Positions 1,721-52,873 of a DNA stretch of 64,000 nt are shown piece by piece (position 1 is the first letter of the stretch; every line of letters starts with the position of its first letter). The stretch lies in contig OZ296649.1 of NCBI GenBank assembly GCA_965655095.1, positions 49,600,001-49,664,000 on the forward strand. The letters run 5' to 3'. The translations under genes were made by a program, and so were the position numbers. The notes below the pieces were generated by a model, which worked only from the letters and a program-made list of their open reading frames with translations, was not told the DNA's origin and ran no database searches. The stretch is from Haplodiscus bocki (taxonomy: Eukaryota).

Positions 1721-1956
1721 CTGAAATGAAAAGGCCCAGATATGATAACCATTTTCGTAATGAACCCGTGAATAATTGTGATCAGATATTTCCAGAAACT
1801 GTCAACTTCTGAAAGCAAATCAAAAGGTTTTTTAAAAAGTGAAACTCAATCTCCGTTACCTGATACTTTGAGCCTCTTGTAAACCTTAAATCAATTATGT
1901 GTTTCTCAAGAGCTTCGAATTTTGCACAAAAGAATGGAAATTTCAACTGCAAATAC

Positions 1957-2610
1957 CTTGCCAGTTTTTATACGCCAAGGCCATCATTGAAAGCGGATTC
2001 TCTCCAAGAGCTCCAAAAGTGTAATACACCAGAGATTTTGACAGAGATCTGTTGAAACCAACCAAACCCAAAGAATACAACAGCCCCATTCCACCTTGGG
2101 CACGCGGTTCTCCCACTGAAGATAAATTAACAAGCATTTCTTTGGCATACTCCAAATTTTGTTTGAAGTGAATCCCAAACAAATGTGCCATTGCTACAAT
2201 GCCTCCCGCTTCAGTGTGATTCCATTTCCACGCTTCTTGAAACAAGGCATATGCTCTTCGAATTGACTTTTTATCTTCGTGTCTATTAACTAAGAAGACA
2301 CCTTCATTGAAAAGATTTTGGCCCTTGATTTTTTCATCGTTGACCCGATCGGTTTCGGCGTCTCCTGTAAGTCTAACAACATCTCTCTCAGGGGTAATTT
2401 CATACGTGCCGCCGGGGGTCCAAGTGTGTGGAAGGTCGTCGTGGGGATCTACGTTTTTAGGTATGCCCAACTCCTCTTTCAGCTTTTCTTCCGTTTCCCT
2501 TCGAACCGCTTGGAAGTTCACATCAACGAACGAACGCTCAAAATATTTCATTGCTTTGGGTTCCGACTCGTCTTCCGCCTCTTCCATCAACTCTTCAGCA
2601 ACTGTTTTGG
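1957..2610 (-). CDS. SEL1L: SEL1L/Hrd3-like ERAD adaptor, coding exon (acidic N-terminal region plus first SEL1 repeats)
   Basis: Translates ...AYALFQEAWKWNHTEA...GEPRAQGGMGLLYSLG...SKSLVYYTFGALGENPLSMMALAYKNWQG, typical of SEL1L. Acceptor TTTTTCAG just above 2610; GT donor at 1955-1956, phase 1, matching the next exon. Confidence 0.9.
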
Positions 2611-6031: not shown

Positions 6032-6640
6032 CGGGATTTTAGTGGTCAGGACTGGGGACTGAAGGTATTCGATTTGAGCAAGTTCACTGAACAAAGTACT
6101 ACCAGACTGGAAGATCCGGAGACAGAATTTCATCGAGGACAGTGTGAGAAATCACTGTACAGCAATTAGAGGCATCAGTTTTGACCCTTACTACAGGAAG
6201 AAGCTCAAGAACTTGGTCTCGCTTCTTCAAGGTTGCCTCAGAAATGTCGAAAGCATCATCATCTGGCACGCCGTGGTAAGTCACACCCTATCGGACTTAC
6301 CGCGTCTCCAACAACAAACAATTCATTGTGTATGAATCGCGGAACATAATTATTACAATCCAGAACAAAATTCAAGACATAGTCAACGTATAAAGGATAC
6401 CCCTACCCGACATCAAACTACGGCTTCGAAAAATATGCATTCTAATTTTGAACCTTACAACAGGTCTGCTCCCAACAAAAGTACAAAAAAATGTTCAAAA
6501 GGATACAAATTTGTCACATTCACCGTCAGTTCACCCGGAAGGCAGCAGGCTTTTTCAAGTGGTGATCTAGAACAAGAGCCATTTGTTGGAGCCTGGTTAA
6601 GAAGAGCAGATCAAAAAAAAAGCAAACCCGCTCTAAAGAT
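6032..6640 (+). pseudogene. SGNH/GDSL hydrolase-like domain fragment (present in every unit; unit 1 coordinates)
   Basis: Consensus RYSI*ASSLDK (TGA probably from GGA, giving block-I-like GASSL), AIRGISF (block II Gly), IIIWHAVVSHSLS (block III position), and a later His-containing segment. Stops and frameshifts are shared across copies. Confidence 0.55.
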
Positions 6641-6899
6641 AGAGAAAGCGGCCAAAATTAAAAAGGTTAATCTTACTTCTGCTTTTCTATCACGTCTCTC
6701 CAAATGGTTACCTCAGCAACTGACAAAAATTTAGTAAGTTGGCTGAAGCTTATGTTTCGTGCTCCAAAAATTCAATTTTGTGTTCAAAACTTCCTCCGGA
6801 TAATGATAATAAAATAATTATATAGTATCTAAAATAAAAAAAATGATAATAACAATAATGTTGTCTCAAAAACATCAGACCAAGCATCTAAATTAATTA

Positions 6900-7990
6900 T
6901 ACTTAACAAACCTAGTCAATTATTAGAACAATAAACTCAGCAAAAACGCAAAAGCCGATTCGGAAAAATGTTGTGCTCGTGAATTTCTGAGGGAGGCACT
7001 CCTTCACACAATCTGGATGTAGAATAAATATTCATAGCAGGAATATATTCGTCGAAAGTCTGATCGCCGCAACAAATATTGTCTAAAAGTGTTTCATCTG
7101 CTTGTCGCACTCAGTTTCATACTTGCAGAGTTGCTCGTAAGACCAGGACGTGTTCCTAGTTACTGAACAATGTCAATTTTACGTACGAAGTGTCGGTGAC
7201 CCATACCAAAAAGTGATTGCAAATGTTATCACGGAAAGAACAAAAGCCCTGTAGGTGATTGGTAATTCTACAGGCATATAATCAATACGTTCAAGTCTGT
7301 TGATTTGCCTCACCAATTTTTTAGCCGTTACGCACATGTCTTTAATATTTGCGTTGAATCTCTATTTTTCATCAATGATAATTTCCAGTAGTATAATTTC
7401 AACGAATTCACTCAAAATGTTTCACGAAGAAATTAGAAACTTTTACGTTTGAAGTAAATCAGGAGCTCTTCTTAAGTATTAGAATTCAGCATCATGCCAT
7501 TTTGATGATCACACCATTCCAAGATATCATCAATCAAAAGTTGGTTATACCGTTTATACCAGCTTTTCCAGCAAGTAGCGATCGTGAGAGCAGACAAGAA
7601 AAACGAGATTTTATACAGTGTCTGGAGAGTGGCAGCATCATGATGTCGACGAAAGAATGCAAACGCGAAAACCCCCAGACATAGGGTTTTCTACGACGCC
7701 ATTTCAACAGAACGGAAACGCCAAGGCTGATGAACCTTTGTTCAAGTTCACTGAGAGCATGGTCGACTATCTGTGTCGGACGGATTATGTGGGTAAGAAG
7801 TTGGAGCAGGCCAATACAGTGTATCACCTAGTTTGTCTTTCAACTTATTACAAAATTTGAAAACTGTACGGTTGCACCACTCACCTTCAGATATCACTGG
7901 ATTGCAAAAACTATAATTCACTATAACTGGCGTGTATTCATGATGGCAGTCGTAAAATGGAGCATAAGTGACTGGGTCAATTTATCAACA
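6900..7990 (-). pseudogene. LINE (CR1/L2-like) ORF2 reverse transcriptase, 3' fragment (present in every unit; unit 1 coordinates)
   Basis: Minus-strand pieces VDHALSELEQRFISLGVSVLLKW, LTIA...IDDILEWCDHQNGMMLNSNT*EELLIYFKRK, and LLEIIIDEK*RFNANIKDMCVTAKKLVRQINRL...TYRAFVLSVITFAITFWYG follow the canonical order of non-LTR RT domains 3-7 and thumb. Confidence 0.8.
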
Positions 7991-10900
7991 CCGATGAGAA
8001 GCTGTGTTTCGCAACACTCGCGGAAACGCAATACAAGTAAGAAAAGTCATAATCTTTTATTCGCTGGATTCTTTATATAAATTTACTAATTCTCCACCGG
8101 CAATGGCACAGACAGTAGAGCATACAGGATTTTAGTGGTCGGGACTGGGGACTGAAGGCATTCGATTTGAGCAAGTTCACTGGACAAAGTACTACCAGAC
8201 TGGAAGATCCGGAGACAGAATTTCATCGAGGACAGTGTGAGAAATCACTGTACAGCAATTAGAGGCATCAGTTTTGACCCTTACTACAGGAAGAAGCTCA
8301 AGAACTTGGTCTCGCTTCTTCAAGGTTGCCTCAGAAAGGTCGAAAGCATCATCATCTGGCACGCCTTGGTAAGTCACCCGTTATCGGCCCACGTCTCCAA
8401 CAAACAATTCATTGTGTATGAATCGCGGAACATAATTATTCCATTCCAGAACAAAATTCAAGCCATAGTCAACGTATAAAGGATACCCCTACCCGACATC
8501 AAACTACGGCTTCGAAAAATATGCATTCTAATTTTGAACCTTACAAAAGATCTGCTCCCAACAAAAGTACGAAAAAATGTTCGAAAGGATACAAATTTGT
8601 CACATTCACCGTCCGTTCACCTGGAAGGCAGCAGGCTTTTTCAAGTGGTGATCTAGAACAAGAGCCATTTGTTGGAGCCTGGTTAAGAAGAGCACATCAA
8701 AAAAAAGCAAACCCGCTCTAAAGAAAATTAGAGAAAGCGGCCAAAATTAAAAAGGTTAATCTTACTTCTGCTTTTCTATCACGTCTCTCCAAATGGTTAC
8801 CTCGGCAACTGACAAAAATTTAGTAAGTTGGCTGAAGCTTATGTTTCGTGCTCCAACAATTCAATTTTATGTTCAAAATTTCCTCCGGATAATGATAATA
8901 AAATAATTAAATAGTATTTAAAGTAATAAATATGATAATAACAATAATGTTGTCTCAAAAACATCAGACCAAGCATTTAATTTAATTATACTTAACAAAC
9001 CTAGTCAATTATTAGAACAATAAACTCAGTAAAAACGCAAAAGCCGATTCGGAAAAATGTTGTGCTTGTGAATTTCTGAGGGAGGCACTCCTTCACGCAA
9101 TCTGGATGTAGAATAAAGATTCATAGCAGGAAAATATTCGTCGAAAGTCTGATTGCCGCAACAAATATTGGCCAAAAGTGTTTCATCTGCTTGTCGCACT
9201 CAGTTTCATACTTGCAGAGTAGCTCGTAAGACCAAGACGTGTTCCTAGTTACTGAACAATGTCAATTTTACGTACGAAGTGTCGGTGACCCATACCAAAC
9301 AGTGATTGCAAATGTTATCACGGAAAGAACAAGAGCCCTGTAGGTGATTGGTAATTCTACAGGCATATAATCATTACGTTCAAGTCTGTTGATTTGCCTC
9401 ACCAATTTTTCAGCCGTTACGCACATGTCTTTAATGTTTGCGTTGAATCTCTATTTTTCATCAATGATAATTTCCAGTAGTATAATTTCAACGAATTCAC
9501 TCAAAATGCTTCTCGAAGGTATTAGAAACTTTTACGTTTGAAGTAAATCAGGAGCTCTTCTTAAGTATTAGAATTCAGCATCATGCCATTTTGATGATCA
9601 CACCATTCCAAGATATCATCAATCAAAAGTTGGTTATACCGTTTATACCAGCTTTTCCAGCAAGTAGCGATCGTGAGAGCAGACAAGAAAAACGAGATTT
9701 TATACAGTGTCTGGAGAGTGGCAGCATCATGATGTCGACGAAAGAATGCAAACGCGAAAACCCCCAGACATAGGGTTTTCTACGACGCCATTTCAACAGA
9801 ACGGAAACGCCAAGGCTGATGAACCTTTGTTCAAGTTCACTGAGAGCATGGTCGACTATCTGTGTCGGACGGATTATGTGGGTAAGAAGTTGGAGCAGGC
9901 CAATACAGTGTATCACCTAGTTTGTCTTTCAACTTATTACAAAATTTGAAAACTGTACGGTTGCACCACTCACCTTCAGATATCACTGGATTGCAAAAAC
10001 TATAATTCACTATAACTGGCGTGTATTCATGATGGCAGTCGTAAAATGGAGCATAAGTGACTGGGTCAATTTATCAACACCGATGAGAAGCTGTGTTTCG
10101 CAACACTCGCGGAAACGCAATACAAGTAAGAAAAGTCATAATCTTTTATTCGCTGGATTCTTTATATAAATTTACTAATTCTCCACCGGCAATGGCACAG
10201 ACAGTAGAGCATACAGGATTTTAGTGGTCGGGACTGGGGACTGAAGGCATTCGATTTGAGCAAGTTCACTGGACAAAGTACTACCAGACTGGAAGATCCG
10301 GAGACAGAATTTCATCGAGGACAGTGCGAGAAATCACTGTACAGCAATTAGAGGCATCAGTTTTGACCCTTACTACAGGAAGAAGCTCAAGAACTTGGTC
10401 TCGCTTCTTCAAGGTTGCCTCAGAAATGTCGAAAGCATCATCATCTGGCACGCCGTGGTAAGTCACACCCTATCGGACTTACCACGTCTCCAACAACAAA
10501 CAATTCATTGTGTATGAATCGCGGAACATAATTATTACAATCCAGAACAAAATTCAAGGCATAGTCAACGTATAAAGGATACCCCTACCCGACATCAAAC
10601 TACGGCTTCGAAAAATATGCATTCTAATTTTGAACCTTACAACAGGTCTGCTCCCAACAAAAGTACAAGAAAATGTTCAAAAGGATACAAATTTGTCACA
10701 TTCACCGTCAGTTCACCCGGAAGGCAGCAGGCTTTTTCAAGTGGTGATCTAGAACAAGAGCCATTTGTTGGAGCCTGGTTAAGAAGAGCACATCAAAAAA
10801 AAGCAAACCCGCTCTAAGGAAAATTAGAGAAAGCGGCCAAAATTAAAAAGGTTAATCTTACTTCTGCCTTTCTATCACGTCTCTCCAAATGGTTACCTCG

Positions 10901-13900
10901 GCAACTGACAAAAATTTAGTAAGTTGGCTGAAGCTTATGTTTCGTGCTCCAACAATTCAATTTTATGTTCAAAATTTCCTCCGGATAAAGATAATAAAAT
11001 AATTAAATAGTATTTAAAATAATAAATATGATAATAACAAAAATGTTGTCTCAAAAACATCAGACCAAGCATTTAATTTAATTATACTTAACAAACCTAG
11101 TCAATTATTAGAACAATAAACTCAGCAAAAACGCAAAAGCCGATTCGGAAAAATGTTGTGCTTGTGAATTTCTGAGGGAGGCACTCCTTCACGCAATCTG
11201 GATGTAGAATAAATATTCATAGCAGGAAAATATTCGTCGAAAGTCTGATTGCCGCAACAAATATTGGTTGAAAGTGTTTCATCTGCTTGTCGCACTCAGT
11301 TTCATACTTGCAGAGTAGCTCGTAAGACCAAGACGTGTTCCTAGTTACTGAACAATGTCAATTTTACGTACGAAGTGTCGGTGACCCATACCAAACAGTG
11401 ATTGCAAATGTTATCACGGAAAGAACAAGAGCCCTGTAGGTGATTGGTAATTCTACAGGCATATAATCATTACGTTCAAGTCTGTTGATTTGCCTCACCA
11501 ATTTTTCAGCCGTTACGCACATGTCTTTAATGTTTGCGTTGAATCTCTATTTTTCATCAATGATAATTTCCAGTAGTATAATTTCAACGAATTCACTCAA
11601 AATGTTTCACGAAGAAATTAGAAACTTTTACGTTTGAAGTAAATCAGGAGCTCTTCTTAAGTATTAGAATTCAGCATCATGCCATTTTGATGATCACACC
11701 ATTCCAAGATATCATCAATCAAAAGTTGGTTATACCGTTTATACCAGCTTTTCCAGCAAGTAGCGATCGTGAGAGCAGACAAGAAAAACGAGATTTTATA
11801 CAGTGTCTGGAGAGTGGCAGCATCATGATGTCGACGAAAGAATGCAAACGCGAAAACCCCCAGACATAGGGTTTTCTACGACGCCATTTCAACAGAACGG
11901 AAACGCCAAGGCTGATGAACCTTTGTTCAAGTTCACTGAGAGCATGGTCGACTATCTGTGTCGGACGGATTATGTGGGTAAGAAGTTGGAGCAGGCCAAT
12001 ACAGTGTATCACCTAGTTTGTCTTTCAACTTAATACAATATTTGAAAACTGTACGGTTGCACCATTCACCTTCAGATATCACTTGATTTCAAACTATATT
12101 TCACTATAACTGGCGTGTATTCATGATGGCAGTCGTAAAATGTAGCATAAGTGACTGGGTCAATTTATCAACACCGATGAGAAGCTGTGTTTCGCAACAC
12201 TCGCGGAAACGCAATACAAGTAAGAAAAGTCATAATCTTTTATTCGCTGGATTCTTTATATAAATTTACTAATTCTCCACCGGCAATGACACAGACAGTA
12301 GAGCATACAGGATTTTAGTGGTCGGGACTGGGGACTGAAGGCATTCGATTTGAGCAAGTTCACTGGACAAAGTACTACCAGACTGGAAGATCCGGAGACA
12401 GAATTTCATCGAGGACAGTGTGAGAAATCACTGTACAGCAATTAGAGGCATCAGTTTTGACCCTTACTACAGGAAGAAGCTCAAGAACTTGGTCTCGCTT
12501 CTTCAAGGTTGCCTCAGAAATGTCGAAAGCATCATCATCTGGCACGCCGTAAAAAGTCACACCCTATCGGACTTACCACGTCTCCAACAACAAACAATTC
12601 ATTGTGTATGAATCGCGGAACATAATTATTACAATCCAGAACAAAATTCAAGGCATAGTCAACGTATAAAGGATACCCCTACCCGACATCAAACTACGGC
12701 TTCGAAAAATATGCATTCTAATTTTGAACCTTACAACAGGTCTGCTCCCAACAAAAGTACAAAAAAATGTTCAAAAGGATACAAATTTGTCACATTCACC
12801 GTCAGTTCACCCGGAAGGCAGCAGGCTTTTTCAAGTGGTGATCTAGAACAAGAGCCATTTGTTGGAGCCTGGTTAAGAAGAGCACATCAAAAAAAAGCAA
12901 ACCCGCACTAAAGAAAATTAGAGAAAGCGGCCAAAATTAAAAAGGTTAATCTTACTTCTGCTTTTCTATCACGTCTCTCCAAATGGTTACCTCGGCAACT
13001 GACAAAAATTTAGTAAGTTGGCTGAAGCTTATGTTTCGTGCTCCAACAATTCAATTTTATGTTCAAAATTTCCTCCGGATAAAGATAATAAAATAATTAA
13101 ATAGTATTTAAAATAATAATTATGATAATAACAAAAATGTTGTCTCAAAAACATCAGACCAAGCATTTAATTTAATTATACTTAACAAACCTAGTCAATT
13201 ATTAGAACAATAAACTCAGCAAAAACGCAAAAGCCGATTCGGTAAAATGTTGTGCTTGTGAATTTCTGAGGGAGGCACTCCTTCACGCAATCTGGATGTA
13301 GAATAAATATTCATAGCAGGAAAATATTCGTCGGAAGGCTGATTGCCGCAACAAATATTGGTTAAAAGTGTTTCATCTGCTTGTCGCACTCAGTTTCATA
13401 CTTGCAGAGTAGCTCGTAAGACCAAGACGTGTTCCTAGTTACTGAACAATGTCAATTTTACGTACGAAGTGTCGGTGACCCATACCAAACAGTGATTGCA
13501 AATGTTATCACGGAAAGAACAAGAGCCCTGTAGGTGATTGGTAATTCTACAGGCATATAATCATTACGTTCAAGTCTGTTGATTTGCCTCACCAATTTTT
13601 CAGCCGTTACGCACATGTCTTTAATGTTTGCGTTGAATCTCTATTTTTCATCAATGATAATTTCCAGTAGTATAATTTCAACGAATTCACTCAAAATGCT
13701 TCTCGAAGGTATTAGAAACTTTTACGTTTGAAGTAAATCAGGAGCTCTTCTTAAGTATTAGAATTCAGCATCATGCCACTTTGATGATCACACCATTCCA
13801 AGATATCATCAATCAAAAGTTGGTTATACCGTTTATACCAGCTTTTCCAGCAAGTAGCGATCGTGAGAGCAGACAAGAAAAACGAGATTTTATACAGTGT

Positions 13901-16546
13901 CTGGAGAGTGGCAGCATCATGATGTCGACGAAAGAATGCAAACGCGAAAACCCCCAGACATAGGGTTTTCTACGACGCCATTTCAACAGAACGGAAACGC
14001 CAAGGCTGATGAACCTTTGTTCAAGTTCACTGAGATCATGGTCGACTATTCGTGTCGGACGGAATATGAGTAAGAAGTTGGAGCAGGCCAATACAGTGTA
14101 TCACGTAGTTTGTCTTTCAACTTATTACAAAATTTGAAAACTGTACAGTTGCACCACTCACCTTCAGATATCACTGGATTGCAAAAACTATAATTCACTA
14201 TAACTGGCGTGTATTCATGATGGCAGTCGTAAAACGTAGCATAAGTGACTGGGTCAATTTATCAACACCGATGAGAAGCTGTGTTTCGCAACACCCGCGG
14301 AAACGCAATACAAGTAAGAAACGCCATAATCTTTTATTCGCTGGATACTTCACATAAAATTACTGTTTCTCCACCGGCAATGGCACAGACAGTAGAGCAT
14401 ACAAGATTTTAGTGGTCGGGACTGGGGACTGAAGGTATTCGATTTGAGCAAGTTCACTGGACAAAGTACTACCAGACTGGAAGATCCGGAGACAATTTCA
14501 TCGAGGACAGTCTGAGCAATCACTGTACAGCAATTAGAGGCATCAGTTTTGACCCTTACTACAGGAAGAAGCTCAAGAACTTGGTCTCGCTTCTTCAAGG
14601 TTGCCTCAGAAAGGTCGAAAGCATCATCATCTGGCACGCCTTGGTAAGTCACTCCTTATCGGCCCACGTCTCCAACAACAAACAATTCATTGTTTATGAA
14701 TCGCGGAACATAATTATTCCATTCCAGAACAAAATTCAAGCCATAGTCAACGTATAAAGGATACCCCTACCCGACATCAAACTACGGCTTCGAAAAATAT
14801 GCATTCTAATTTTGAACCTTACAACAGATCTGCTCCCAACAAAAGTACGAAAAAATGTTGGAAAGGATACAAATTTGTCACATTCACCGTCCGTTCACCT
14901 GGAAGGCAGCAGGATTTTTCAAGTGGTGATCTAGAACAAGAGCCATTCGTTCTTTGGAGCCTGGTTAAGAAGAGCAGATCAAAAAAAGCAAACCCGCTCT
15001 AAAGATAGAGAAAGCGGCCAAAATTAAAAAGGTTAATCTTACTTCTGCTTTTCTATCACGTCTCTCCAAATGGTTACCTCAGCAACTGACAAAAATTTAG
15101 TAAGTTGGCTGAAGCTTATGTTTCGTGCTCCAAAAATTCAATTTTGTGTTCAAAACTTCCTCCGGATAATGATAATAAAATAATTATATAGTATCTAAAA
15201 TAAAAAAAAATGATAATAACAATAATGTTGTCTCAAAAACATCAGACCAAGCATCTAAATTAATTATACTTAACAAACCTAGTCAATTATTAGAACAATA
15301 AACTCAGCAAAAACGCAAAAGCCGATTCGGAAAAATGTTGTGCTCGTGAATTTCTGAGGGAGGCACTCCTTCACACAATCTGGATGTAGAATAAATATTC
15401 ATAGCAGGAATATATTCGTCGAAAGTCTGATCGCCGCAACAAATATTGTCTAAAAGTGTTTCATCTGCTTGTCGCACTCAGTTTCATACTTGCAGAGTTG
15501 ATCGTAAGACCAAGACGTGTTCCTAGTTACTGAACAATGTCAATTTTACGTACGAAGTGTCGGTGACCCATACCAAAAAGTGATTGCAAATGTTATCACG
15601 GAAAGATCAAAAGCCCTGTAGGTGATTGGTAATTCTACAGGCATATAATCAATACGTTCAAGTCTGTTGATTTGCCTCACCAATTTTTTAGCCGTTACGC
15701 AGATGTCTTCAATATTTGCGTTGAATCTCTATTTTTCATCAATGATAATTTCCAGTAGTATAATTTCAACGAATTCACTCAAAATGTTTCACGAAGAAAT
15801 TAGAAACTTTTACGTTTGAAGTAAATCACGAGCTCTTCTTAAGTATTAGAATTCAGCATCATGCCATTTTGATGATCACACCATTCCAAAATATCATCAA
15901 TCATAAGTTGGTTATACCGTTTATACCATCTTTTCCAGCAAGTAGCGATCATGAGAGCAGACAAGAAAAACGAGATTTTATACAGTGTCTGGAGAGTGGC
16001 AGCATCATGATGTCGACGAAAGAATGCAAACGCGAAAACCCCCAGACATAGGGTTTTCTACGACGCCATTTCAACAGAACGGAAACGCCAAGGCTGATGA
16101 ACCTTTGTTCAAGTTCACTGAGAGCATGGTCGACTATCTGTGTCGGACGGATTATGTGGGTAAGAAGTTGGAGCAGGCCAATACAGTGTATCACCTAGTT
16201 TGTCTTTCAACTTATTACAAAATTTGAAAACTGTACGGTTGCACCACTCACCTTCAGATATCACTGGATTGCAAAAACTATAATTCACTATAACTGGCGT
16301 GTATTCATGATGGCAGTCGTAAAATGGAGCATAAGTGACTGGGTCAATTTATCAACACCGATGAGAAGCTGTGTTTCGCAACACTCGCGGAAACGCAATA
16401 CAAGTAAGAAAAGTCATAATCTTTTATTCGCTGGATTCTTTATATAAGTTCACTAATTCTCCACCGGCAATGGCACAGACAGTAGAGCATACAAGATTTT
16501 AGTGGTCGGGACTGGGGACTGAAGGTATTCGATTTGAGCAAGTTCA

Positions 16547-17026
16547 ATGGACAAAGTACTACCAGACTGGAAGATCCGGAGACAGAATTTCATCGAGGAC
16601 AGTCTGAGCAATCACTGTACAGCAATTAGAGGCATCAGTTTTGACCTTTACTACAGGAAGAAGCTCAAGAACTTAGTCTCGCTTCTTCAAGGTTGCCTCA
16701 GAAATGTCGAAACCATCATCATCTGGCACGCCGTGGTAAGTCACTCCTTATCGGCCCACGTCTCCAACAACAAACAATTCATTGTGTATGAATCGCGGAA
16801 CATAATTATTCCATTCCAGAACAAAATTCAAGCCATAGTCAACGTAAAAAGGATACCCCTACCCGACATCAAACTACGGCTTCGAAAAATATGCATTCTA
16901 ATTTTGAACCTTACAACAGATCTGCTCCCAACAAAAGTACAAAAAAATGTTCGAAAGGATACAAATTTGTCACATTCACCGTCCGTTCATCTGGAAGGCA
17001 GCAGGATTTTTCAAGTGGTGATCTAG
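16547..17026 (+). other. 159-aa open SGNH-like ORF unique to unit 6
   Basis: Unit 6 has TCAATG (others TCACTG or TCGCTG) and GTAAAA (others GTATAA), giving the longest ORF in the array. Confidence 0.3.
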
Positions 17027-35000: not shown

Positions 35001-38000
35001 GGTTGCACCACTCACCTTCAGATATCACTGGATTGCAAAAACTATAATTCACTATAACTGGCGTGTATTCATGATGGCAGTCGTAAAATGTAGCATAAGT
35101 GACTGGGTCAATTTATCAACACCGATGAGAAGCTGTGTTTCGCAACACTCGCGGAAACGCTATACAAGTAAGAAAAGTCATAATCTTTTATTCGCTGGAT
35201 TCTTTATATAAATTTACTAATTCTCCACCGGCAATGGCACAGACAGTAGAGCATACAGGATTTTAGTGGTCGGGACTGGGGACTGAAGGTATTCGATTTG
35301 AGCAAGTTCACTGGACAAAGTACTACCAGACTGGAAGATCCGGAGACAGAATTTCATCGAGGACAGCGTGAGCAATCACTGTACAGCAATTAGAGGCATC
35401 AGTTTTGACCTTTACTACAGGAAGAAGCTCAAGAACTTAGTCTCGCTTCTTCAAGGTTGCCTCAGAAATGTCGAAAGCATCATCATCTGGCACGCCGTGG
35501 TAAGTCACTCCTTATCGGCCCACGTCTCCAACAAACAATTCATGGTGTATGAATCGCGGAACATAATTATTACATTCCAGAACAAAATTCAAGCCATAGT
35601 CAACGTATAAAGGATACCCCTACCCGACATCAAACTACGGCTTCGAAAAATATGCATTCTAATTTTGAACCTTACAACAGATCTGCTCCCAACAAAAGTA
35701 CGAAAAAATGTTCGAAAGGATACAAATTTGTCACATTCACCGTCCGTTCACCTGGAAGGCAGCAGGATTTTTCAAGTGGTGATCTAGAACAAGAGCCATT
35801 CGTTGTTTGGAGCCTGGTTAAGAAGAGCAGATCAAAAAAAAGCAAACCCGCTCTAAAGATAGAGAAAGCGGCCAAAATTAAAAAGGTTAATCTTACTTCT
35901 GCTTTTCTATCACGTCTCTCCAAATGGTTACCTCAGCAACTGACAAAAATTTAGTAAGTTGGCTGAAGCTTATGTTTCGTGCTCCAAAAATTCAATTTTA
36001 TGTTCAAAATTTCCTCCGGATAATGATAAAAAAATAATTAAATAGTATTTAAAATAATAAATATGATAATAACAAAAATGTTGTCTCAAAAACATCAGAC
36101 AACGCATCTGATTTAATTATACTTAACAAACCTAGTCAATTATTAGAACAATAAACTCAGCAAAAACGCAAAAATCGATTCGGAAAAATGTTGTGCTTGT
36201 GAATTTCTGAGGGAGGCACTCCTTCACGCAATCTGGATGTAGAATAAATATTCATAGCAGGAATATATTCGTCGAAAGTCTGATTGCCGCAACAAATATT
36301 GTTTAAAAGAGTTTCATCTGCTTGTCGCACTCAGTTTCATACTTGCAGAGTTGCTCGTAAGACCAAGACGTGTTCCTAGTTACTGAACAATGTCAATTTT
36401 ACGTACGAAGTGTCGGTGACCCATACCAAACAGTGATTGCAAATGTTACCACGGAAAGAACAAAAGCCCTGTAGGTGATTGGTAATTCTACAGGCATATA
36501 ATCATTACGTTCAAGTCTGTTGATTTGCCTCATCAATTTTTTAGCCGTTACGCACATGTATTAAATATTTGCGTTGAATCTCTATTTTTCATCAATGATA
36601 ATTTCCAGTAGTATAATTTCAACGAATTCACTCAAAATTTTTCACGAAGAAATTAGAAACTTTTACGTTTGAAGTAAATCACGAGCTCTTCTTAAGTATT
36701 AGAATTCAGCATCATGCCATTTTGATGATCACACCATTCCAAAATATCATCAATCATAAGTTGGTTATACCGTTTATACCATCTTTTCCAGCAAGTGGCG
36801 ATCGTGAGAGCAGACAAGAAAAACGAGATTTTATACAGTGTCTGGAGAGTGGCAGCATCATGATGTCGACGAAAGAATGCAAACGCGAAAACCCCCAGAC
36901 ATAGGGTTTTCTACGACGCCATTTCAACAGAACGGAAACGCCAAGGCTGATGAACCTTTGTTCAAGTTCACTGAGAGCATGGTCGACTATCTGTGTCGGA
37001 CGGATTATGTGGGTAAGAAGTTGGAGCAGGCCAATACAGTGTATCACCTAGTTTGTCTTTCAACTTATTACAAAATTTGAAAACTGTACGGTTGCACCAC
37101 TCACCTTCAGATATCACTGGATTGCAAAAACTATAATTCACTATAACTGGCGTGTATTCATGATGGCAGTCGTAAAATGTAGCATAAGTGACTGGGTCAA
37201 TTTATCAACACCGATGAGAAGCTGTGTTTCGCAACACTCGCGGAAACGCTATACAAGTAAGAAAAGTCATAATCTTTTATTCGCTGGATTCTTTATATAA
37301 ATTTACTAATTCTCCACCGGCAATGGCACAGACAGTAGAGCATACAGGATTTTAGTGGTCGGGACTGGGGACTGAAGGTATTCGATTTGAGCAAGTTCAC
37401 TGGACAAAGTACTACCAGACTGGAAGATCCGGAGACAGAATTTCATCGAGGACAGCGTGAGCAATCACTGTACAGCAATTAGAGGCATCAGTTTTGACCT
37501 TTACTACAGGAAGAAGCTCAAGAACTTAGTCTCGCTTCTTCAAGGTTGCCTCAGAAATGTCGAAAGCATCATCATCTGGCACGCCGTGGTAAGTCACTCC
37601 TTATCGGCCCACGTCTCCAACAAACAATTCATGGTGTATGAATCGCGGAACATAATTATTACATTCCAGAACAAAATTCAAGCCATAGTCAACGTATAAA
37701 GGATACCCCTACCCGACATCAAACTACGGCTTCGAAAAATACGCATTCTAATTTTGAACCTTACAACAGATCTGCTCCCAACAAAAGTACAAAAAAATGT
37801 TCGAAAGCATACAAATTTGTCACATTCACCGTCAGTTCACCTGGAAGACAGCAGGATTTTTCAAGTGGTGATCTAGAACAAGAGCCATTTGTTGGAGCCT
37901 GGTTAAGAAGAGCAGACCAAAAAAAAGCAAACCCGCTCTAAAGAAAGAGAAAGCGGCCAAAATTAAAAAGGTTAATCTTACTTCTGCTTTTCTATCACGT

Positions 38001-41000
38001 CTCTCCAAATGGTTACCTCGGCAACTGACAAAAATTTAGTAAGTTGGCTGAAGCTTATGTTTCGTGCTCCAAAAATTCAATTTTATAATCAAAAATTCCT
38101 CCGGATAATGATAAAAAAATAATTGAATAGTATTTAAAATAAAAAATATGATAATAACAATAATGTTGTCTCAAAAACATCAGACCACGCATCTGATTTA
38201 ATTATACTTAACAAACCTAGTCAATTATTAGAACAATAAACTCAGCAAAAACGCAAAAATCGATTCGGAAAAATGTTGTGCTTGTGAATTTCTGAGGGAG
38301 GCACTCCTTCACGCAATCTGGATGTAGAATAAAAATTCATAGCAGGAATAAATTCGTCGAAAGTCTGATTGCGGCAACAAATATTGTTTAAAAGTGTTTC
38401 ATCTGCTTGTCGCACTCAGTTTCATACTTGCAGAGTTGCTCGTAAGACCAGGACGTGTTCCTAGTTACTGAACAATGTCAATTTTACGTACGAAGTGTCG
38501 GTGACCCATACCAAACAGTGATTGCAAATGTTACCACGGAAAGAACAAAAGCCCTGTAGGTGATTGGTAATTCTACAGGCATATAATCATTACGTTCAAG
38601 TCTGTTGATTTGCCTCACCAATTTTTTAGCCGTTACGCACATGCCTTAAATATTTGCGTTGAATCTCTATTTTTCATCAATGATAATTTCCAGTAGTATA
38701 ATTTCAACGAATTCACTCAAAATTTTTCACGAAGAAATTAGAAACTTTTACGTTTGAAGTAAATCACGAGCTCTTCTTAAGTATTAGAATTCAGCATCAT
38801 GCCATTTTGATGATCACACCATTCCAAAATATCATCAATCATAAGTTGGTTATACCGTTTATACCATCTTCTCCAGCAAGTAGCGATCGTGAGAGCAGAC
38901 AAGAAAAACGAGATTTTATGCAGTGTCTGGAGAGTGGCAACATCATGATGTCGACGAAAGAATGCAAACGCGAAAACCCCCAGACATAGGGACTTCTACG
39001 ACGCCATTTCAACAGAACGGAAACGCCAAGGCTGATGAACCTTTGTTCAAGTTCACTGAGAGCATGGTCGAATATCTGTGTCGGGCGGAATATGGGAGTA
39101 AGAAGTTGGAGCAGGCCAATACAGTGTATCACCTAGTTTGTCTTTCAACTTAATACAATATTTGAAAACTGTACGGTTGCACCATTCACCTTCAGATATC
39201 ACTTGATTTCAAACTATATTTCACTATAACTGGCGTGTATTCATGATGGCAGTCGTAAATTGTAGCATAAGTGACTGGGTCAATTTATTAACACCGATGA
39301 GAAGCTGTGCTTCGCAACACTCGCGGAAACGCAATACAAGTAAGAAAAGTCATAATCTTTTATTCGCTGGATACTTTTTTATAAAATTACTGTTTCTCCA
39401 CCGGCAATGGCACAGACAGTAGAGCATACAGGATTTTAGTGCTCGGGACTGGGGACTGAAGGTATTCGATTTGAGCAAGTTCACTGGACAAAGTACTACC
39501 AGACTGGAAGATCCGGAGACAGAATTTCATCGAGGACAGTGTGAGCAATCACTGTACAGCAATTAGAGGCATCAGTTTTGACCTTTACTACAGGAAGAAG
39601 CTCAGGAACTTGGTCTCGCTTCTTCAAGGTTGCCTCAGAAATGTCGAAAGCATCATCATCTGGCACGCCGTGGTAAGTCACTCCTTATTGGCCCACGTCT
39701 CCAACAAACAATTCATTGTGTATGAATCGCGGAACATAATTATTCTATTCCAGAACAGAAATCAAGCCATAGTCAACGTATAAAGGATACCCCTACCCGA
39801 CATCAAACTACGGCTTCGAAAAATATGCATTCTAATTTTGAACCTTACAACAGATCTGCTCCCAACAAAAGTACGAAAAAACGTTCAAAAGGATACAAAT
39901 TTGTCACATTCACCGTCAGTTCACCTGGAAGGCAGCAGGCTTTTTCAAGTGGTGATCTAGAGCAAGAGCCATTTGTTGTTTGGAGCCTGGTTAAGAAGGG
40001 CAGATCAAAAAAAAGCAAACCCGCTCTAAAGATAGAGAAAGCGGCCAAAATTAAAAAGGTTAATCTTACTTCTGCTTTTCTATCACGTCTCTCCAAATGG
40101 TTACCTCGGCAACTGACAAAAATTTAGCAAGTTGGCTGAAGCTTATGTTTCGTGCTCCAAAAATTCAATTTTATAATCAAAATTTCCTCCGGATAATGAT
40201 AAAAAAATAATTAAATAGTATTTAAAATAATAAATATGATAATAACAATAATGTTGTCTCAAAAACATCAGACTACGCATCTGATTTAATTATACTTAAC
40301 AAACCTAGTCAATTATTAGAACAATAAACTCAGCAAAAACGCAAAAGCCGATTCGGAAAAATGTTGTGCTTGTGAATTTCTGAGGGAGGCACTCCTTCAC
40401 GCAATCTGGATGTAGAATAAATATTCATAGCAGGAAAATATTCGTCGAAAGTCTGATTGCGGCAACAAAAATTGTTTAAAAGTGTTTCATCTGCTTGTCG
40501 CACTCAGTTTCATACTTGCAGAGTTGCTCGTAAGACCAGGACGTGTTCCTAGTTACTGAAGAATGTCAATTTTACGTACGAAGTGCCGGTGACCCATACC
40601 AAACAGTGATTGCAAATGTTATCACGGAAAGAACAAAAGCCCTGTGGGTGATTGGTAATTCTACAGGCATATAATCATTACGTTCAAGTCTGTTGATTTG
40701 CCTCACCAATTTTTTAGCCGTTACGCACATGTTTTTAATATTTGCGTTGAATCTCTATTTTTCATCAAAGATAAGTTCCAGTAGTATAATTTCAACGAAT
40801 TGACTCAAACTGTTTCACGAAGGTATTAGAAACTTTTACGTTTGAAGTAAATCACGAGCTCTTCTTAAGTATTAGAATTCAGCATCAAGCCATTTTTATA
40901 ATCACACCATTCCAGAATATCATCAATCATAAGTTGGTTATACCGTTTATACCATCTTTTCCAGCAAGTAGCGATCGTGAGAGCAGACAAGAAAAACGAG

Positions 41001-44000
41001 ATTTTATGCAGTGTCTGGAGAGTGGCAATATCATGATGTCGACGAAAGAATGCAAACGCGAAAACCCCCAGACATAGGGACTTCTACGACGCCATTTCAA
41101 CAGAACGGAAACGCCAAGGCTGATGAACCTTTGTTCAAGTTCACTGAGAGCATGGTCGACTATGTGTCGCGCGAAATATGTGAGTAAGAAGTTGGAGCAG
41201 GCCAATACAGTGTATCACCTAGTTTGTCTTTCAACTTATTACAATATTTAAAAACTGTACGGTTGCACCATTCACTTTCAGATATCACTTGATTTCAAAC
41301 TATAATTCAGTATAACTGGCGTGTATTCATGATGGCAGTCGTAAAATGTAGCATAATTGACTGGGTCAATTTATTAACACAGATGAGAAGCTGTGCTTCG
41401 CAACACTCGCGGAAACGCAAGACAAGTAAGAAACGCCATAATCTTTTATTCGCTGGTTACCTTTTATAAAATTACTGATTCTCCACCGGAATGGCACAGA
41501 CAGTAGAGCATACAGGATTTTAGTGGTCGGGACTGGGGACTGAAGGTATTCGATTTGAGCAAGTTCACTGGACAAAGTACTACCAGACTGGAAGATCCGG
41601 AGACAGAATTTCATCGAGGACAGTGTGAGCAATCACTGTACAGCAATTAGAGGCATCAGTTTTGACCCTTACTACAGGAAGAAGCTCAAGAACTTGGTCT
41701 CGCTTCTTTAAGGTTGCCTCAGAAATGTCGAAAGCATCATCATCTGGCACGCCGTGGTAAGTCACTCCTTATTGGCCCACGTCTCCAACAAACAATTCAT
41801 TGTGTTTGAATCGCGGAACATAATTATTCCATTCCAGAACAGAAATCAAGCCATAGTCAACGTATAAAGGATACCCCTACCCGACATCAAACTACGGCTT
41901 CGAAAAAAATGCATTCCAATTTTGAACCTTACAACAGATCTGCTCCCAACAAAAGTACAAAAAAATGTTCGAAAGGATACAAATTTGTCACATTCACCGT
42001 CCGTTCACCTGGAAGGCAGCAGGATTTTTCAAGTGGTGATCTAGAACAAGAGCCATTCGTTGTTTGGAGCCTGGTTAAGAAGAGCAGATCAAAAAAAAGC
42101 AAACCCGCTCTAAAGAAGATTAGAGAAAGCGGCCAAAATTAAAAAGGTTAATCTTACTTCTGCTTTTCTATCACGTCTCTCCAAATGGTTACCTCGGCAA
42201 CTGACAAAAATTTAGTAAGTTGGCTGAAGCTTATGTTTCGTGCTCCAAAAATTCAAGTTTATGTTCAAAGTTTTCCCCGGATAATGATAAAAAAATAATT
42301 AAATAGTATTTAAAGTAATAAATATGATAACAATAATGTTGTCTCAAAAACATCAGACCAAGCATCTAATTTAATTATACTTAACAAACCTAGTCAATTA
42401 TTAGAACAATAAACTCAGCAAAAACGCAAAAGCCGATTCGGAAAAATGTTGTGCTTGTGAATTTCTGAGGGAGGCACTCCTTCACGCAATCTGGATGTAG
42501 AATAAATATTCATAGCAGGAATATATTCGTCGAAAGTCTGATTGCCGCAACAAATATTGTTTAAAAGTGTTTCATCTGCTTGTCGCACTCAGTTTCATAC
42601 TTGCAGAGTTGCTCGTAAGACCAAGACGTGTTCCTAGTTACTGAACAATGTCAATTTTACGTACGAAGTGTCGGTGACCCATACCAAACAGTGATTGCAA
42701 ATGTTATCACGGAAAGAACAAAAGCCCTGTAGGTGATTGGTAATTCTACAGGCATATAATCATTACGTTCAAGTCTGTTGATTTGCCTCACCAATTTTTT
42801 AGCCGTTACGCACATGTCGTTAATATTTGCGTTGAATCTCTATTTTTCATCAATGATAATTTCCAGTAGTATAAATTCAACGAATTCACTCAAAATGTTT
42901 CACGAAGGTATCAGAAACTTTTACGTTTGAAGTAAATCACGAGCTCTTCTTAAGTATTAGAATTCAGCATCATGCCATTTTGATGATCACACCATTCCAA
43001 AATATCATCAATCAAAAGTTGGTTATACCGTTTATACCAGCTTTTCCAGCAAGTAGCGATCGTGAGAGCAGACAAAAAAACGTGATTTTATGCAGTGTCC
43101 GGAGAGTGGCAGCATCATCATGTCGACGAAAGAATGCAAACGCGAAAACCCCCAGACATAGGGACTTCTACGACGCCATTTCAACAGAACGGAAACGCCA
43201 AGGCTGATGAACCTTTGTTCAAGTTCACTGAGAGCATGGTAGACTGTCTGTGTCGGGCGGAATATGGGAGTAAGAAGTTGGAGCAGGCCAATACAGTGTA
43301 TCACCTAGTTTGTCTTTCAACTTAATACAATATTTGAAAACTGTACGGTTTCACCATTCACCTTCAGATATCACTTGATTTCAAACTATATTTCATTATA
43401 ACTGGCGTGTATTCATGATGGCAGTCGTAAAATGTAGCATAAGTGACTGGGTCAATTTATTAACACCGATGAGAAGCTGTGATTCGCAACACTCGCGGAA
43501 ACGCAATACAAGTAAGAAAAGTCATAAACTTTTATTCGCTGGACACTTTATATAAAACTACTGTTTCTCCACCGGCAATGGCACAGACAGTAGAGCATAC
43601 AGGATTTTAGTGGTCGGGACTGGGGACTGAAGGTATTCGATTTGAGCAAGTTCACTGGACAAAGTACTACCAGACTGGAAGATCCGGAGACAGAATTTCA
43701 TCGAGGACAGTCTGAGCAATCACTGTACAGCAATTAGAGGCATCAGTTTTGACCCTTACTACAGGAAGAAGCTCAAGAACTTAGTCTCGCTTCTTCAAGG
43801 TTGCCTCAGAAATGTCGAAAGCATCATCATCTGGCACGCCGTGGTAAGTCACTCCTTATCGGCCCACGTCTCCAACAAACAATTCATGGTGTATGAATCG
43901 CGGAACATAATTATTACATTCCAGAACAAAATTCAAGCCATAGTCAACGTATAAAGGATACCCCTACCCGACATCAAACTACGGCTTCGAAAAACATGCA

Positions 44001-47000
44001 TTCTAATTTTGAACCTTACAACAGATCTGCTCCCAACAAAAGTACAAAAAACGTTCAAAAGGATACAAATTTGTCACATTCACCGTCAGTTCACCTGGAA
44101 GGCAGCAGGCTTTTTCAAGTGGTGATCTAGAGCAAGAGCCATTTGTTGTTTGGAGCCTGGTTAAGAAGAGCAGATCAAAAAAAAGCAAACCCGCTCTAAA
44201 GATAGAGAAAGCGGCCAAAATTAAAAAGGTTAATCTTACTTCTGCTTTTCTATCACGTCTCTCCAAATGGTTACCTCGGCAACTGACAAAAATTTAGTAA
44301 GTTGGCTGAAGCATATGTTTCGCGCTCCAAAAATTCAATTTTATGTTCAAAATTTCCTCCGGATAATGATAAAAAAATAATTAAATAGTATTTAAAATAA
44401 TAAATATGATAACAATAATGTTGTCTCAAAAACATCAGACCACGCATCTAATTTAATTATACTTAACAAACCTAGTCAATTATTAGAACAATAAACTCAG
44501 CAAAAACGCAAAAGCCGATTCGGAAAAATGTTGTGCTTGTGAATTTCCGAGGGAGGCACTCCTTCACGCAATCTGAATGTAGAATAAAAATTCATAGCAG
44601 GAATATATTCGTCGAAAGTCTGATTGCCGCAACAAATATTGTTTAAAAGTGTTTCATCTGCTTGTCGCACTCAGTTTCATACCTGCAGAGTTGCTCGTAA
44701 GACCAAGACGTGTTAGTTACTGAACAATGTCAATTTTACGTTCGAAGTGTCGGTGCCCATCCCAAACAGTGATTGCAAATGTTATCACGGAAAGAACAAA
44801 AGCCCCGTAGGTGATTGGTAACTCTACAGGCATATAATCATTACGTTCAAGTCTGTTGATTTGCCTCACCAATTTTTTAGCCGTTACGCACATGTCTTTA
44901 ATATTTGCGTTGAATCTCTATTTTTCATCAATGATAATTTCCAGTAGTATAAATTCAACGAATTCACTCAAAATGTTTCACGAAGGTATTAGAAACTTTT
45001 ACGTTTGAAGTAAATCAGGAGCTCTTCTTAAGTAATAAAATTCAGCATCATGCAAATTTGATGATCACACCATTCCAAAATATCATCAATCATAAGTTGG
45101 TTATACTGTTTATACCATCTTTTCCAGCAAGTAGCGATCGTGAGAGCAGACAAAAAAAACGTGATTTTATGCAGTGTCCGGAGAGTGGCAGCATCATCAT
45201 GTCGACGAAAGAATGCAAACGCGAAGACCCCCAGACATAGGGACTTCTACGACGCCATTTCAACAGAACGGAAACGCCAAGACTGATGAACCTTTGTTCA
45301 AGTTCACTGAGAGCATGGTAGACTGTCTGTGTCGGGCGGAATATGGGAGTAAGAAGTTGGAGCAGGCCAATACAGTGTATCACCTAGTTTGTCTTTCAAC
45401 TTAATACAATATTTGAAAACTGTACGGTTGCACCATTCACCTTCAGATATCACTTGATTTCAAACTATATTTCATTATAACTGGCGTGTATTCATGATGG
45501 CAGTCGTAAAATGTAGCATAAGTGACTGGGTCAATTTATTAACACCGATGAGAAGCTGTGCTTCGCAACACTCGCGGAAACGCAATACAAGTAAGAAAAG
45601 TCATAAACTTTTATTCGCTGGACACTTTATATAAAACTACTGTTTCTCCACCGGCAATGGCACAGACAGTAGAGCATACAGGATTTTAGTGGTCGGGACT
45701 AGGGACTGAAGGTATTCGATTTGAGCAAGTTCACTGGACAAAGTACTACCAGACTGGAAGATCCGGAGACAGAATTTCATCGAGGACAGTCTGAGCAATC
45801 ACTGTACAGCAATTAGAGGCATCAGTTTTGACCCTTACTACAGGAAGAAGCTCAAGAACTTGGGTCTCGCTTCTTCAAGGTTGCCTCAGAAATGTCGAAA
45901 GCATCATCATCTGGCACGCCGTGGTAAGTCACTCCTTATTGGCCCACGTCTCCAACAAACAATTCATTGTGTATGAATCGCGGAACATAATTATTCCATT
46001 CCAGAACAGAAATCAAGCCATAGTCAACGTATAAAGGATACCCCTACCCGACATCAAACTACGGCTTCGAAAAATATGCATTCTAATTTTGAACCTTACA
46101 ACAGATCTGCTCCCAACAAAAGTACGAAAAAACGTTCAAAAGGATACAAATTTGTCACATTCACCGTCAGTTCACCTGGAAGGCAGCAGGCTTTTTCAAG
46201 TGGTGATCTAGAGCAAGAGCCATTTGTTGTTTGGAGCCTGGTTAAGAAGAGCAGATCAAAAAAAAGCAAACCCGCTCTAAAGATAGAGAAAGCGGCCAAA
46301 ATTAAAAAGGTTAATCTTACTTCTGCTTTTCTATCACGTCTCTCCAAATGGTTACCTCGGCAACTGACAAAAATTTAGTAAGTTGGCTGAAGCATATGTT
46401 TCGCGCTCCAAAAATTCAATTTTATGTTCAAAATTTCCTCCGGATAATGATAAAAAAATAATTAAATAGTATTTAAAATAATAAATATGATAACAATAAT
46501 GTTGTCTCAAAAACATCAGACCACGCATCTAATTTAATTATACTTAACAAACCTAGTCAATTATTAGAACAATAAACTCAGCAAAAACGCAAAAGCCGAT
46601 TCGGAAAAATGTTGTGCTTGTGAATTTCCGAGGGAGGCACTCCTTCACGCAATCTGAATGTAGAATAAAAAGTCATAGCAGGAATATATTCGTCGGAAGT
46701 CTGATTGCCGCAACAAATATTGTTTAAAAGTGTTTCATCTGCTTGTCGCACTCAGTTTCATACCTGCAGAGTTGCTCGTAAGACCAAGACGTGTTAGTTA
46801 CTGAACAATGTCAATTTTACGTTCGAAGTGTCGGTGCCCATCCCAAACAGTGATTGCAAATGTTATCACGGAAAGAACAAAAGCCCCGTAGGTGATTGGT
46901 AACTCTACAGGCATATAATCATTACGTTCAAGTCTGTTGATTTGCCTCACCAATTTTTTAGCCGTTACGCACATGTCTTTAATATTTGCGTTGAATCTCT

Positions 47001-47731
47001 ATTTTTCATCAATGATAATTTCCAGTAGTATAAATTCAACGAATTCACTCAAAATGTTTCACGAAGGTATTAGAAACTTTTACGTTTGAAGTAAATCAGG
47101 AGCTCTTCTTAAGTAATAAAATTCAGCATCATGCAAATTTGATGATCACACCATTCCAAAATATCATCAATCATAAGTTGGTTATACTGTTTATACCATC
47201 TTTTCCAGCAAGTAGCGATCGTGAGAGCAGACAAAAAAAACGTGATTTTATGCAGTGTCCGGAGAGTGGCAGCATCATCATGTCGACGAAAGAATGCAAA
47301 CGCGAAAACCCCCAGACATAGGGACTTCTACGACGCCATTTCAACAGAACGGAAACGCCAAGACTGATGAACCTTTGTTCAAGTTCACTGAGAGCATGGT
47401 AGACTGTCTGTGTCGGGCGGAATATGGGAGTAAGAAGTTGGAGCAGGCCAATACAGTGTATCACCTAGTTTGTCTTTCAACTTATTACAATATTTGAAAA
47501 CTGTACGGTTGCACCATTCACCTTCAGATATCACTTGATTTCAAACTATAATTCACTATAACTAGCGTGTATTCATGATGGCAGTCGTAAAATGTAGCAT
47601 AATTGACTGGGTCAATTTATTACAACAGATGAGAAGCTGTGCTTCGCAACACTCGCGGAAACGCAATACAAGTAAGAAACGTCATAATCTTTTATTCGCT
47701 GGATACTTTATATAAAATTACTGTTTCTCCA

Positions 47732-47910
47732 CCGGCAATGGCACAGACAGTAGAGCATAAGACTGCGGTGCGAAAAGTCCCAGATTCGAGCCTACGACAC
47801 TCACTCCTCTCCTTGGTCAAAATTTAAGAAATTGAGCGATTTGTAAACGGATCGAAAAAAGTTGGCAGAAGCCTATGATATTATAACACTTGCTTGCATA
47901 AGTGTAATAA
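47732..47910 (+). mobile_element. tRNA-derived SINE, copy 2 (its A-box half also closes every array unit)
   Basis: TGGCACAGACAGTAGAGC (A-box-like) ... CAGATTCGAGCC (B-box-like); the body is homologous to the copy at 3037-3202. Confidence 0.72.
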
Positions 47911-52660: not shown

Positions 52661-52664
52661 TGGG

Positions 52665-52871: not shown

Positions 52872-52873
52872 AA

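What the first reader, a model, noticed from the sequence alone, without database searches (positions are those of the whole stretch)
6032..47759. Newborn 20-copy macrosatellite with one exact junction and a reconstructable ancestral locus
Seen: exactly 20 whole units with no partial end copy. The left flank (CGAGTACGTA|CGGGATTTT) continues the SGNH-like frame. The right flank (GTAGAGCATA|AGACTGCGG) completes the SINE. All 19 internal junctions fuse these two at a shared TA. Inference: one microhomology-mediated event (tandem duplication, or rolling-circle amplification of a 2.09-kb circle at its own locus) copied already dead, nested TE debris that then expanded. This is an unusually clean view of satellite birth, 3.4 kb from a housekeeping exon.
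Basis: partly seen in the sequence, partly recalled or inferred. Interest (0 to 1): 0.8.

Follow-up and report, generated by a model that had tools for sequence, protein, structure and literature searches.

The report
Old 20-copy tandem repeat, not newborn
A 42-kb stretch of this probable coral's DNA is one 2.09-kb non-coding piece repeated exactly 20 times head to tail; it is a real but ordinary tandem array that began with one local duplication millions of years ago and grew stepwise, so it is not a newborn satellite.

Summary
Window 6032-47759 contains exactly 20 whole head-to-tail units of 2043-2097 bp. All 19 internal junctions sit at the same breakpoint. Both array ends are sharp, and the flanks share only the dinucleotide TA with the unit. 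A second public assembly (ENA ERZ26859043, a 143-kb contig) has the same array length.

- **Origin:** one founding junction is well supported.
- **Age:** units differ by 3.2% on average and up to 5%. With published stony-coral substitution rates that puts the origin roughly 13-35 Myr ago. Only the central units (U9-U16, 99.3-99.9% identical) are young.
- **Growth:** the unit tree has two well-supported clades. Neighbouring units are more alike than distant ones (Mantel r=0.50), and blocks of 2-3 units were copied together. This fits stepwise unequal exchange, not a single rolling-circle burst.
- **Microhomology:** a 2-bp overlap is expected by chance about 17% of the time.
- **Named content:** neither "SGNH-like frame" nor "SINE" was confirmed. 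Pfam, ARAGORN and Rfam gave no hits.
- **Coding:** the unit shows no constraint and no transposon termini.

This is a locus-specific macrosatellite of a known kind. Other follow-ups in this scan report transposon-derived and gene-derived arrays in the same genome. Whether the unit occurs elsewhere in the genome could only be tested weakly.

The parts
6032..47759 (.). Tandem array of 20 whole units of about 2.09 kb (41,728 bp), 38.5% G+C
   Evidence: same length in ENA contig
6030..6031 (.). TA at the end of the left flank. It is identical to the last two bases of every unit, so the breakpoint is ambiguous by 2 bp.
   Evidence: chance P(>=2 bp) about 0.17
47758..47759 (.). TA at the end of unit 20, followed by unique right flank (AGACTGCGG...)
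6032..16491 (.). Units 1-5, left-edge members of clade II. All 5 private variants of unit 1 lie in its first 350 alignment columns (edge isolated from exchange).
22726..39428 (.). Units 9-16, the young core with pattern A B C A B A B C. Pairs are 99.3-99.9% identical at lags of 2, 3 and 5 units, meaning recent multi-unit block duplications.
   Evidence: identity matrix; tree
39429..47759 (.). Units 17-20, right-edge members of clade I (95-97% to the left-edge units). Three of 6 private variants of unit 20 lie in its last 200 columns.
18589..20631 (.). Unit 7, the shortest unit (2043 bp), with a private 52-bp deletion near its 3' end
7182..7361 (-). Possible remnant of a LINE ORF2 C-terminal region, repeated in every unit. 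This is a lead only.
   Evidence: ESM Atlas feature hit 0.91 to a cluster in which 16% of members carry PF09004; no Pfam hit
8000..8044 (.). Roughly 45-bp piece of the unit that also occurs in other sequence contexts in the read contigs (a dispersed repeat fragment)
   Evidence: loose ends at 7998-8000 (before) and 8033-8044 (behind) in all four runs
47737..47795 (+). tRNA-like box A / box B motifs straddling the right boundary, seen by eye only.
   Evidence: negative; searches found no other copy
1943..2590 (-). SEL1L-like exon (Sel1-repeat ERAD protein), the nearest conserved exon. Further exons lie at 1464-1712 and 496-843.
   Evidence: Pfam Sel1 on downstream ORFs of the same gene in the ENA gene table

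Best explanation
This is a locus-specific macrosatellite formed on the spot. One non-homologous tandem duplication of a 2.09-kb stretch of non-coding, decayed intergenic or intronic DNA created a single novel junction (unit end joined to unit start at TA). The resulting dimer then served as substrate for out-of-register homologous exchange (unequal sister-chromatid or allelic exchange and conversion). Over millions of years this raised the copy number to 20, most recently by copying blocks of 2-3 units in the centre. Shown: the anatomy, the single junction, the divergence structure, and the absence of coding constraint and of transposon ends. Inferred: the repair pathway of the first event, the exchange mechanism, the dates, and the lack of function.
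For: The same junction occurs 19 times, and the flanks are unrelated to the unit. Divergence is hierarchical: two clades at 99/98 support, with left-edge units in one and right-edge units in the other, interleaved in the middle. 190 of 361 variable columns are shared by two or more units. Array distance correlates with divergence, Mantel r=0.50, 0 of 5000 permutations as high. Units 9-11 are close to 14-16 and units 12-13 to 14-15, at 99.3-99.9%. Private variants of unit 1 cluster at its outer edge, as expected where exchange cannot reach. No TIR, hairpin, poly-A or target-site duplication beyond TA was found. ORFs are broken in 7-12 of 20 units and variable sites show no significant third-codon-position excess (7/10/17, 10/10/14 and 11/7/8 in the three frames tested). 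Diversity is even along the unit. The only protein relative of the longest frame among 5.8 billion sequences is the array itself. Unit contig depth is about 10-14 times flank depth, not hundreds. The two-stage model of satellite origin is standard (PMC5932611, PMC12628747).
Against: I could not search the rest of this genome for the unit or its junction. The depth figures from contigs are rough. The read and assembly evidence may all come from one individual or read set. No empty or single-copy allele and no close sister species was available: the related locus L005 shares only exons. The pre-duplication locus is therefore deduced, not observed.
Confidence: 0.75

Rival explanations
1. The first amplification was by a circle. 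The 2.09-kb segment was excised as extrachromosomal circular DNA closed at TA, copied by rolling-circle replication, and the concatemer recombined back into its home locus. Later exchange reshaped the array.
For: It predicts the same whole-unit array with one junction and intact flanks. This route is discussed for TE-derived arrays (PMC5932611, Fig. 1B legend).
Against: A single burst predicts a star-like tree. Instead there are two deep clades that sort by array edge, strong isolation by distance and many shared variants. Nothing in the sequence calls for a circle.
Confidence: 0.1
2. The unit is a non-autonomous mobile element that stacks head to tail. Candidates are a partner of the rolling-circle elements that earlier notes report in this genome, or a TA-targeting DNA transposon. 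Under this reading the flanks were once adjacent.
For: Earlier notes of this scan describe Helitron-like elements abutting at one exact nucleotide in this genome (unchecked by me). Each unit can be read as flanked by TA.
Against: There are no terminal inverted repeats, no 3' hairpin, no 5'-TC / 3'-CTRR ends and no Rep, helicase or transposase remnant. No relatives of the unit ORF occur on any other contig. Depth is compatible with about 20 copies in total. No further copy lies in the 10 kb beyond the window.
Confidence: 0.07
3. The array is a functional tandem gene or RNA array kept by selection.
For: Short ORFs of 80-100 aa recur in many units.
Against: The ORFs are broken in 7-12 of 20 units. 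Two of them overlap on opposite strands. There is no significant codon-position bias, no Pfam or Rfam family, and no conserved sub-region. No RNA run was on offer, so expression is untested.
Confidence: 0.05
4. The copy number is an assembly artefact.
For: Long arrays can be mis-sized, and both assemblies may rest on the same reads.
Against: All 20 units are distinct (95-99.9%). A second assembly gives the identical length. Short-read contigs from two samples show unit words at many times flank depth.
Confidence: 0.03

Closest known systems
Two-stage model of satellite origin (small tandem created first, then expansion by unequal exchange; Stephan & Cho 1994 as cited in PMC5932611 and PMC12628747)
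   Same: One founding junction, whole units, neighbour similarity, block duplications, and edge units that are isolated and more diverged.
   Different: Here the starting dimer seems to be a plain segmental duplication of mixed non-coding DNA. It is neither a double TE insertion with a target-site duplication between copies nor an LTR-LTR exchange.
Locus-specific macrosatellites (kb-sized units, tens of copies at one site, such as those studied on mammalian chromosomes)
   Same: Unit size in kilobases, tens of copies, and apparently a single locus next to ordinary genes.
   Different: No ORF or conserved element was found in the unit. Copy-number polymorphism and chromatin role are untested. 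The host is a cnidarian.
TE-derived satellites in this same genome (earlier follow-up s1-369336: a 1.88-kb inner piece of a DNA transposon copied about 80 times)
   Same: A kb-sized unit amplified in place from dead repeat-derived DNA.
   Different: There the parent transposon was identified. Here no parent element could be named.
Head-to-tail Helitron-like arrays reported in this genome (earlier follow-ups s1-359270, s1-376414)
   Same: Head-to-tail copies meeting at one exact nucleotide.
   Different: No rolling-circle genes or termini are present, and the unit is 2 kb rather than 15-17 kb.

Membership tests
Tandem-duplication-born macrosatellite | Head-to-tail units of 1 kb or more, many copies | tested here: met
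   20 units of 2043-2097 bp
Tandem-duplication-born macrosatellite | One identical novel junction in all copies, and flanks unrelated to the unit | tested here: met
   19 of 19 junctions at the same breakpoint; no flank homology
Tandem-duplication-born macrosatellite | Signs of unequal exchange: neighbours more alike, block duplications, isolated edges | tested here: met
   Mantel r=0.50, 0 of 5000 permutations; A B C A B A B C core; edge-clustered private variants
Tandem-duplication-born macrosatellite | Confined to one locus | tested here: inconclusive
   Depth about 10-14 times flank for majority contigs. ORF relatives occur only on this contig. The whole genome was not searchable.
Tandem-duplication-born macrosatellite | Copy number varies among individuals | not testable with these tools
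   Only contigs of two samples were on offer, with no raw reads
TE-derived satellite | Unit recognisably derived from a named transposable element | tested here: inconclusive
   No Pfam hit. One weak Atlas lead to a LINE-associated domain. A 45-bp piece is dispersed elsewhere.
tRNA-derived SINE (at the right boundary) | tRNA-related head recognised by tRNA models | tested here: not met
   ARAGORN found 0. Rfam found no tRNA at gathering score or at E<=10.
tRNA-derived SINE (at the right boundary) | Multiple dispersed copies | tested here: inconclusive
   None in the window. Metagenome scans gave no hits or chance hits only. The genome itself was not searchable.
SGNH/GDSL hydrolase remnant (at the left boundary) | Match to an SGNH/GDSL family profile | tested here: not met
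   No family at E<=1 for frames 5978-6166(+) and 5969-6151(-), nor for the other unit frames
Helitron/Helentron-type rolling-circle element | Characteristic termini (5' TC, 3' hairpin plus CTRR) or Rep/helicase remnant | tested here: not met
   Unit ends are CAGGATTTT... and ...GTAGAGCATA. No hairpin or inverted repeat near the ends. No protein family hit.
Tc1/mariner-type DNA transposon (TA target) | Terminal inverted repeats | tested here: not met
   No inverted repeat between the unit ends

The most novel reading that the evidence does not exclude
The array preserves the footprint of a circle-mediated birth. A 2.09-kb extrachromosomal circle closed at TA was amplified by rolling-circle replication and re-entered its own locus. 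The still-active core (units 9-16) keeps shedding and re-capturing such circles. This would make the locus a tractable natural model of satellite birth in a cnidarian.
Probability: 0.07. Interest if true: 0.55.

Novelty: new member of a known kind. Interest (0 to 1): 0.25.

Why it matters
This is a clean textbook example. Both original breakpoints are intact, there is one junction, and the units are diverged enough to read the order of events: two old subfamilies that sort by array edge, and a young core built by multi-unit duplications. That makes it a useful teaching or modelling case for unequal-exchange dynamics, and a candidate copy-number marker in this coral. It does not reveal a new mechanism, and nothing suggests a function or an effect on the neighbouring SEL1L-like gene.

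Tried and rejected
- **TRF:** it cannot see periods above 500 bp, so I used scripts instead.
- **Pfam on 20 stop-free pieces of unit and flanks:** nothing usable, including my own by-eye reading of 49927-50457(-) as a reverse-transcriptase fragment.
- **tblastn of RT-carrying ORFs from related coral loci against the locus:** no hits.
- **Rfam and ARAGORN for the supposed SINE:** nothing.
- **Metagenome scan with a 20-mer from the unit end:** 0 hits.
- **Second metagenome scan with a 17-mer from the right flank:** 42 unrelated chance hits, mostly bacterial-looking.
- **Orthologous-locus test:** the closest available relative (88% aa, 77% nt in the SEL1L-like exon) shares no non-coding sequence with the window, so it says nothing about the ancestral copy number.
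- **Exact-protein look-ups:** three of them found no record.
- **Transposon array:** rejected, because there are no termini and no sign of dispersal.
- **Gene array:** rejected, because the ORFs are broken and unconstrained.
- **Assembly artefact:** rejected, because the units are distinct and a second assembly agrees.
Full report
**Observation.** TRF with its 500-bp period limit misses the array. A motif search finds the unit-end decamer every 2079-2097 bp (2043 bp for the short unit 7), with one 4174-bp gap where unit 10 carries a substitution. The context of each hit shows the same junction...GAGCATA|CA[G/A]GATTTT. Splitting at the junctions gives 20 units of 2043-2097 bp from 6032 to 47759. 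The last 60 bases of the left flank match the unit end at only 15-16 of 60 positions. The first 60 bases of the right flank match the unit start at only 10-12 of 60. BLASTN of a unit against both flanks gives nothing below E=0.47. So there are exactly 20 whole units with sharp ends, and the only shared letters at the breakpoint are TA.

**Is the array real?** Every unit is distinct, at 95.1-99.9% pairwise identity.
- The longest stop-free frame of the unit led to an ENA assembly contig (ERZ26859043, ctg84407, 143,131 bp) that carries the same locus.
- Genes in the left flank, inside the array and in the right flank all map to that contig with the same offset of +32183.
- The parts I could read (window 1-14138, 19382-43865, 47443-64000) differ at one base, 38353. 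The array length therefore agrees. The two assemblies may rest on the same reads.
- Logan contigs of four runs (one study, two samples) carry flank contigs at word depth about 8-39 and unit contigs at about 85-530 within the same runs. That is roughly 10-14 times for the majority-variant contigs.
- The tool warns this is not a copy number. I use it only to say "tens, not hundreds or thousands".

**Age and mode of growth.**
- Mean Jukes-Cantor distance among units is 0.032. Between the two main clades it is 0.037. The maximum is 0.050 and the minimum 0.001.
- Published scleractinian rates are 0.71-1.42e-9 per site per year (PMC13440232). They give about 13-26 Myr for the clade split, up to about 35 Myr for the deepest pair, and 0.3-0.7 Myr for the youngest pair.
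- That the host is a stony coral comes from earlier notes of this scan and is unchecked. Conversion between units would make the dates underestimates. The conclusion "not newborn" is robust all the same.
- The ML tree has two clades with 99/98 support. Units 1-5 at the left edge fall in one clade and units 17-20 at the right edge in the other. The two clades interleave in the middle.
- 190 of 361 variable columns are shared by two or more units.
- Divergence rises with distance along the array (Mantel r=0.50; 0 of 5000 permutations as high).
- Units 9-16 read A B C A B A B C, with 99.3-99.9% identity at lags of 2, 3 and 5 units. This means recent duplications of 2-3-unit blocks.
- All five private variants of unit 1 lie in its first 350 columns, and three of six for unit 20 in its last 200. 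This is expected if the outer edges cannot be overwritten by out-of-register exchange.
- Together these results fit one old dimer that grew stepwise by unequal exchange. They do not fit one amplification burst.

**The founding event.** One junction shared by all copies means one founding rearrangement. The overlap is 2 bp. With this window's base composition, an overlap of 2 bp or more is expected in 17% of random joins. A microhomology-mediated mechanism is therefore possible but not shown.

**What the unit is made of.**
- The unit is 38.5% G+C, with CpG observed/expected of 0.95 and transitions about equal to transversions.
- Ten stop-free pieces of unit 1 and ten more from unit 20 and the flanks gave no Pfam family at E<=1 that means anything. 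This includes both frames that cross the left boundary. The SGNH reading is not supported.
- One minus-strand piece (7182-7361) resembles, by language-model features, a cluster in which some members carry PF09004. From memory, that domain also occurs in LINE ORF2 tails. This is a lead only.
- A roughly 45-bp piece (8000-8044) occurs in other contexts in the read contigs, so some repeat-derived material is present.
- The recurrent ORFs are broken in 7-12 of the 20 units, and their variable sites show no significant third-position excess: 7/10/17, 10/10/14 and 11/7/8 in the three frames tested.
- Diversity is spread evenly along the unit.
- No terminal inverted repeats, hairpins or other transposon ends were found.

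**The "SINE" at the right boundary.** By eye, box-A-like and box-B-like motifs straddle 47759|47760. ARAGORN finds no tRNA. Rfam finds none at gathering score or at E<=10 in a 501-base scan. The window holds no other copy. Two metagenome scans found nothing relevant. The claim that the right flank completes a pre-existing element stays untested.

**Surroundings.**
- To the left, on the minus strand, lie exons of a SEL1L-like gene. The alignment with relatives is, and Pfam Sel1 hits are in the ENA gene table. An SRP68 gene lies beyond that.
- The conserved part of the nearest exon starts about 3.4-3.5 kb from the array.
- That exon lacks a plausible start and signal peptide, so at least one 5' exon is missing. 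The array may therefore be upstream of the gene or inside its first intron. I could not decide which.
- A related coral locus (L005: 88% aa and 77% nt in that exon) shares no non-coding sequence with the window in its 10 kb upstream. The sister-species test was uninformative.

**Comparison and verdict.** The anatomy matches the standard two-stage model of satellite origin: a small tandem forms first, then expands by unequal exchange (PMC5932611 and PMC12628747). It also matches locus-specific macrosatellites. Earlier follow-ups in this scan already report several tandem arrays in this genome, including a 1.88-kb transposon-derived satellite and head-to-tail Helitron-like stacks. I took the latter as a rival explanation, and its defining features are not met here. 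The finding is real, tidy and of a known kind. It is old at its root and young only at its core.

Noticed in passing
window 52665-64000: Earlier first-stage notes flag a Polinton/adintovirus-like endogenous element here. It shares nothing with the array unit. ORFs of 152-440 aa occur on the plus strand. I did not analyse it.
   Followed up: no
window 56145-56558: Two tandem copies of a 208-bp unit, 97% identical, inside the Polinton-like region.
   Followed up: no
window 48383-48760: Inverted repeat with 48-nt arms, 85% complementary, 282 nt apart. It is a MITE-like structure in the right flank.
   Followed up: no
window 49927-50457 (minus strand): A 176-aa ORF that looks by eye like a reverse-transcriptase palm fragment, but Pfam gives no RVT hit.
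   Followed up: partly
window 4233-5374: Several loose ends of read contigs in the left flank (4233, 4283, 5291, 5374). They suggest a dispersed repeat or a structural allele between the SEL1L-like exon and the array.
   Followed up: no
window 6022: A C/T difference at about half depth in sample S1, nine bases before the array. It is probably a heterozygous site, and it shows that short-read contigs reach the left boundary.
   Followed up: no
window 7998-8021 (unit positions about 1967-1990): Read contigs of both samples carry a unit variant with 24 extra letters at a small back-step (8021 to 7998), at 0.5-2 times flank depth. It is absent from the assembled units, so it may be the other haplotype or another copy (table 5c).
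   Followed up: no
L005:1366-1897 and 9923-10532: In the related coral, the SEL1L-like exon is present twice within 9 kb (75.7% and 77.3% nt identity to the window exon), with an RVT_1 ORF between the copies.
   Followed up: no
L003:18347-19833 (left of the window): SRP68 exons lie just beyond the SEL1L-like gene on the same strand.
   Followed up: no
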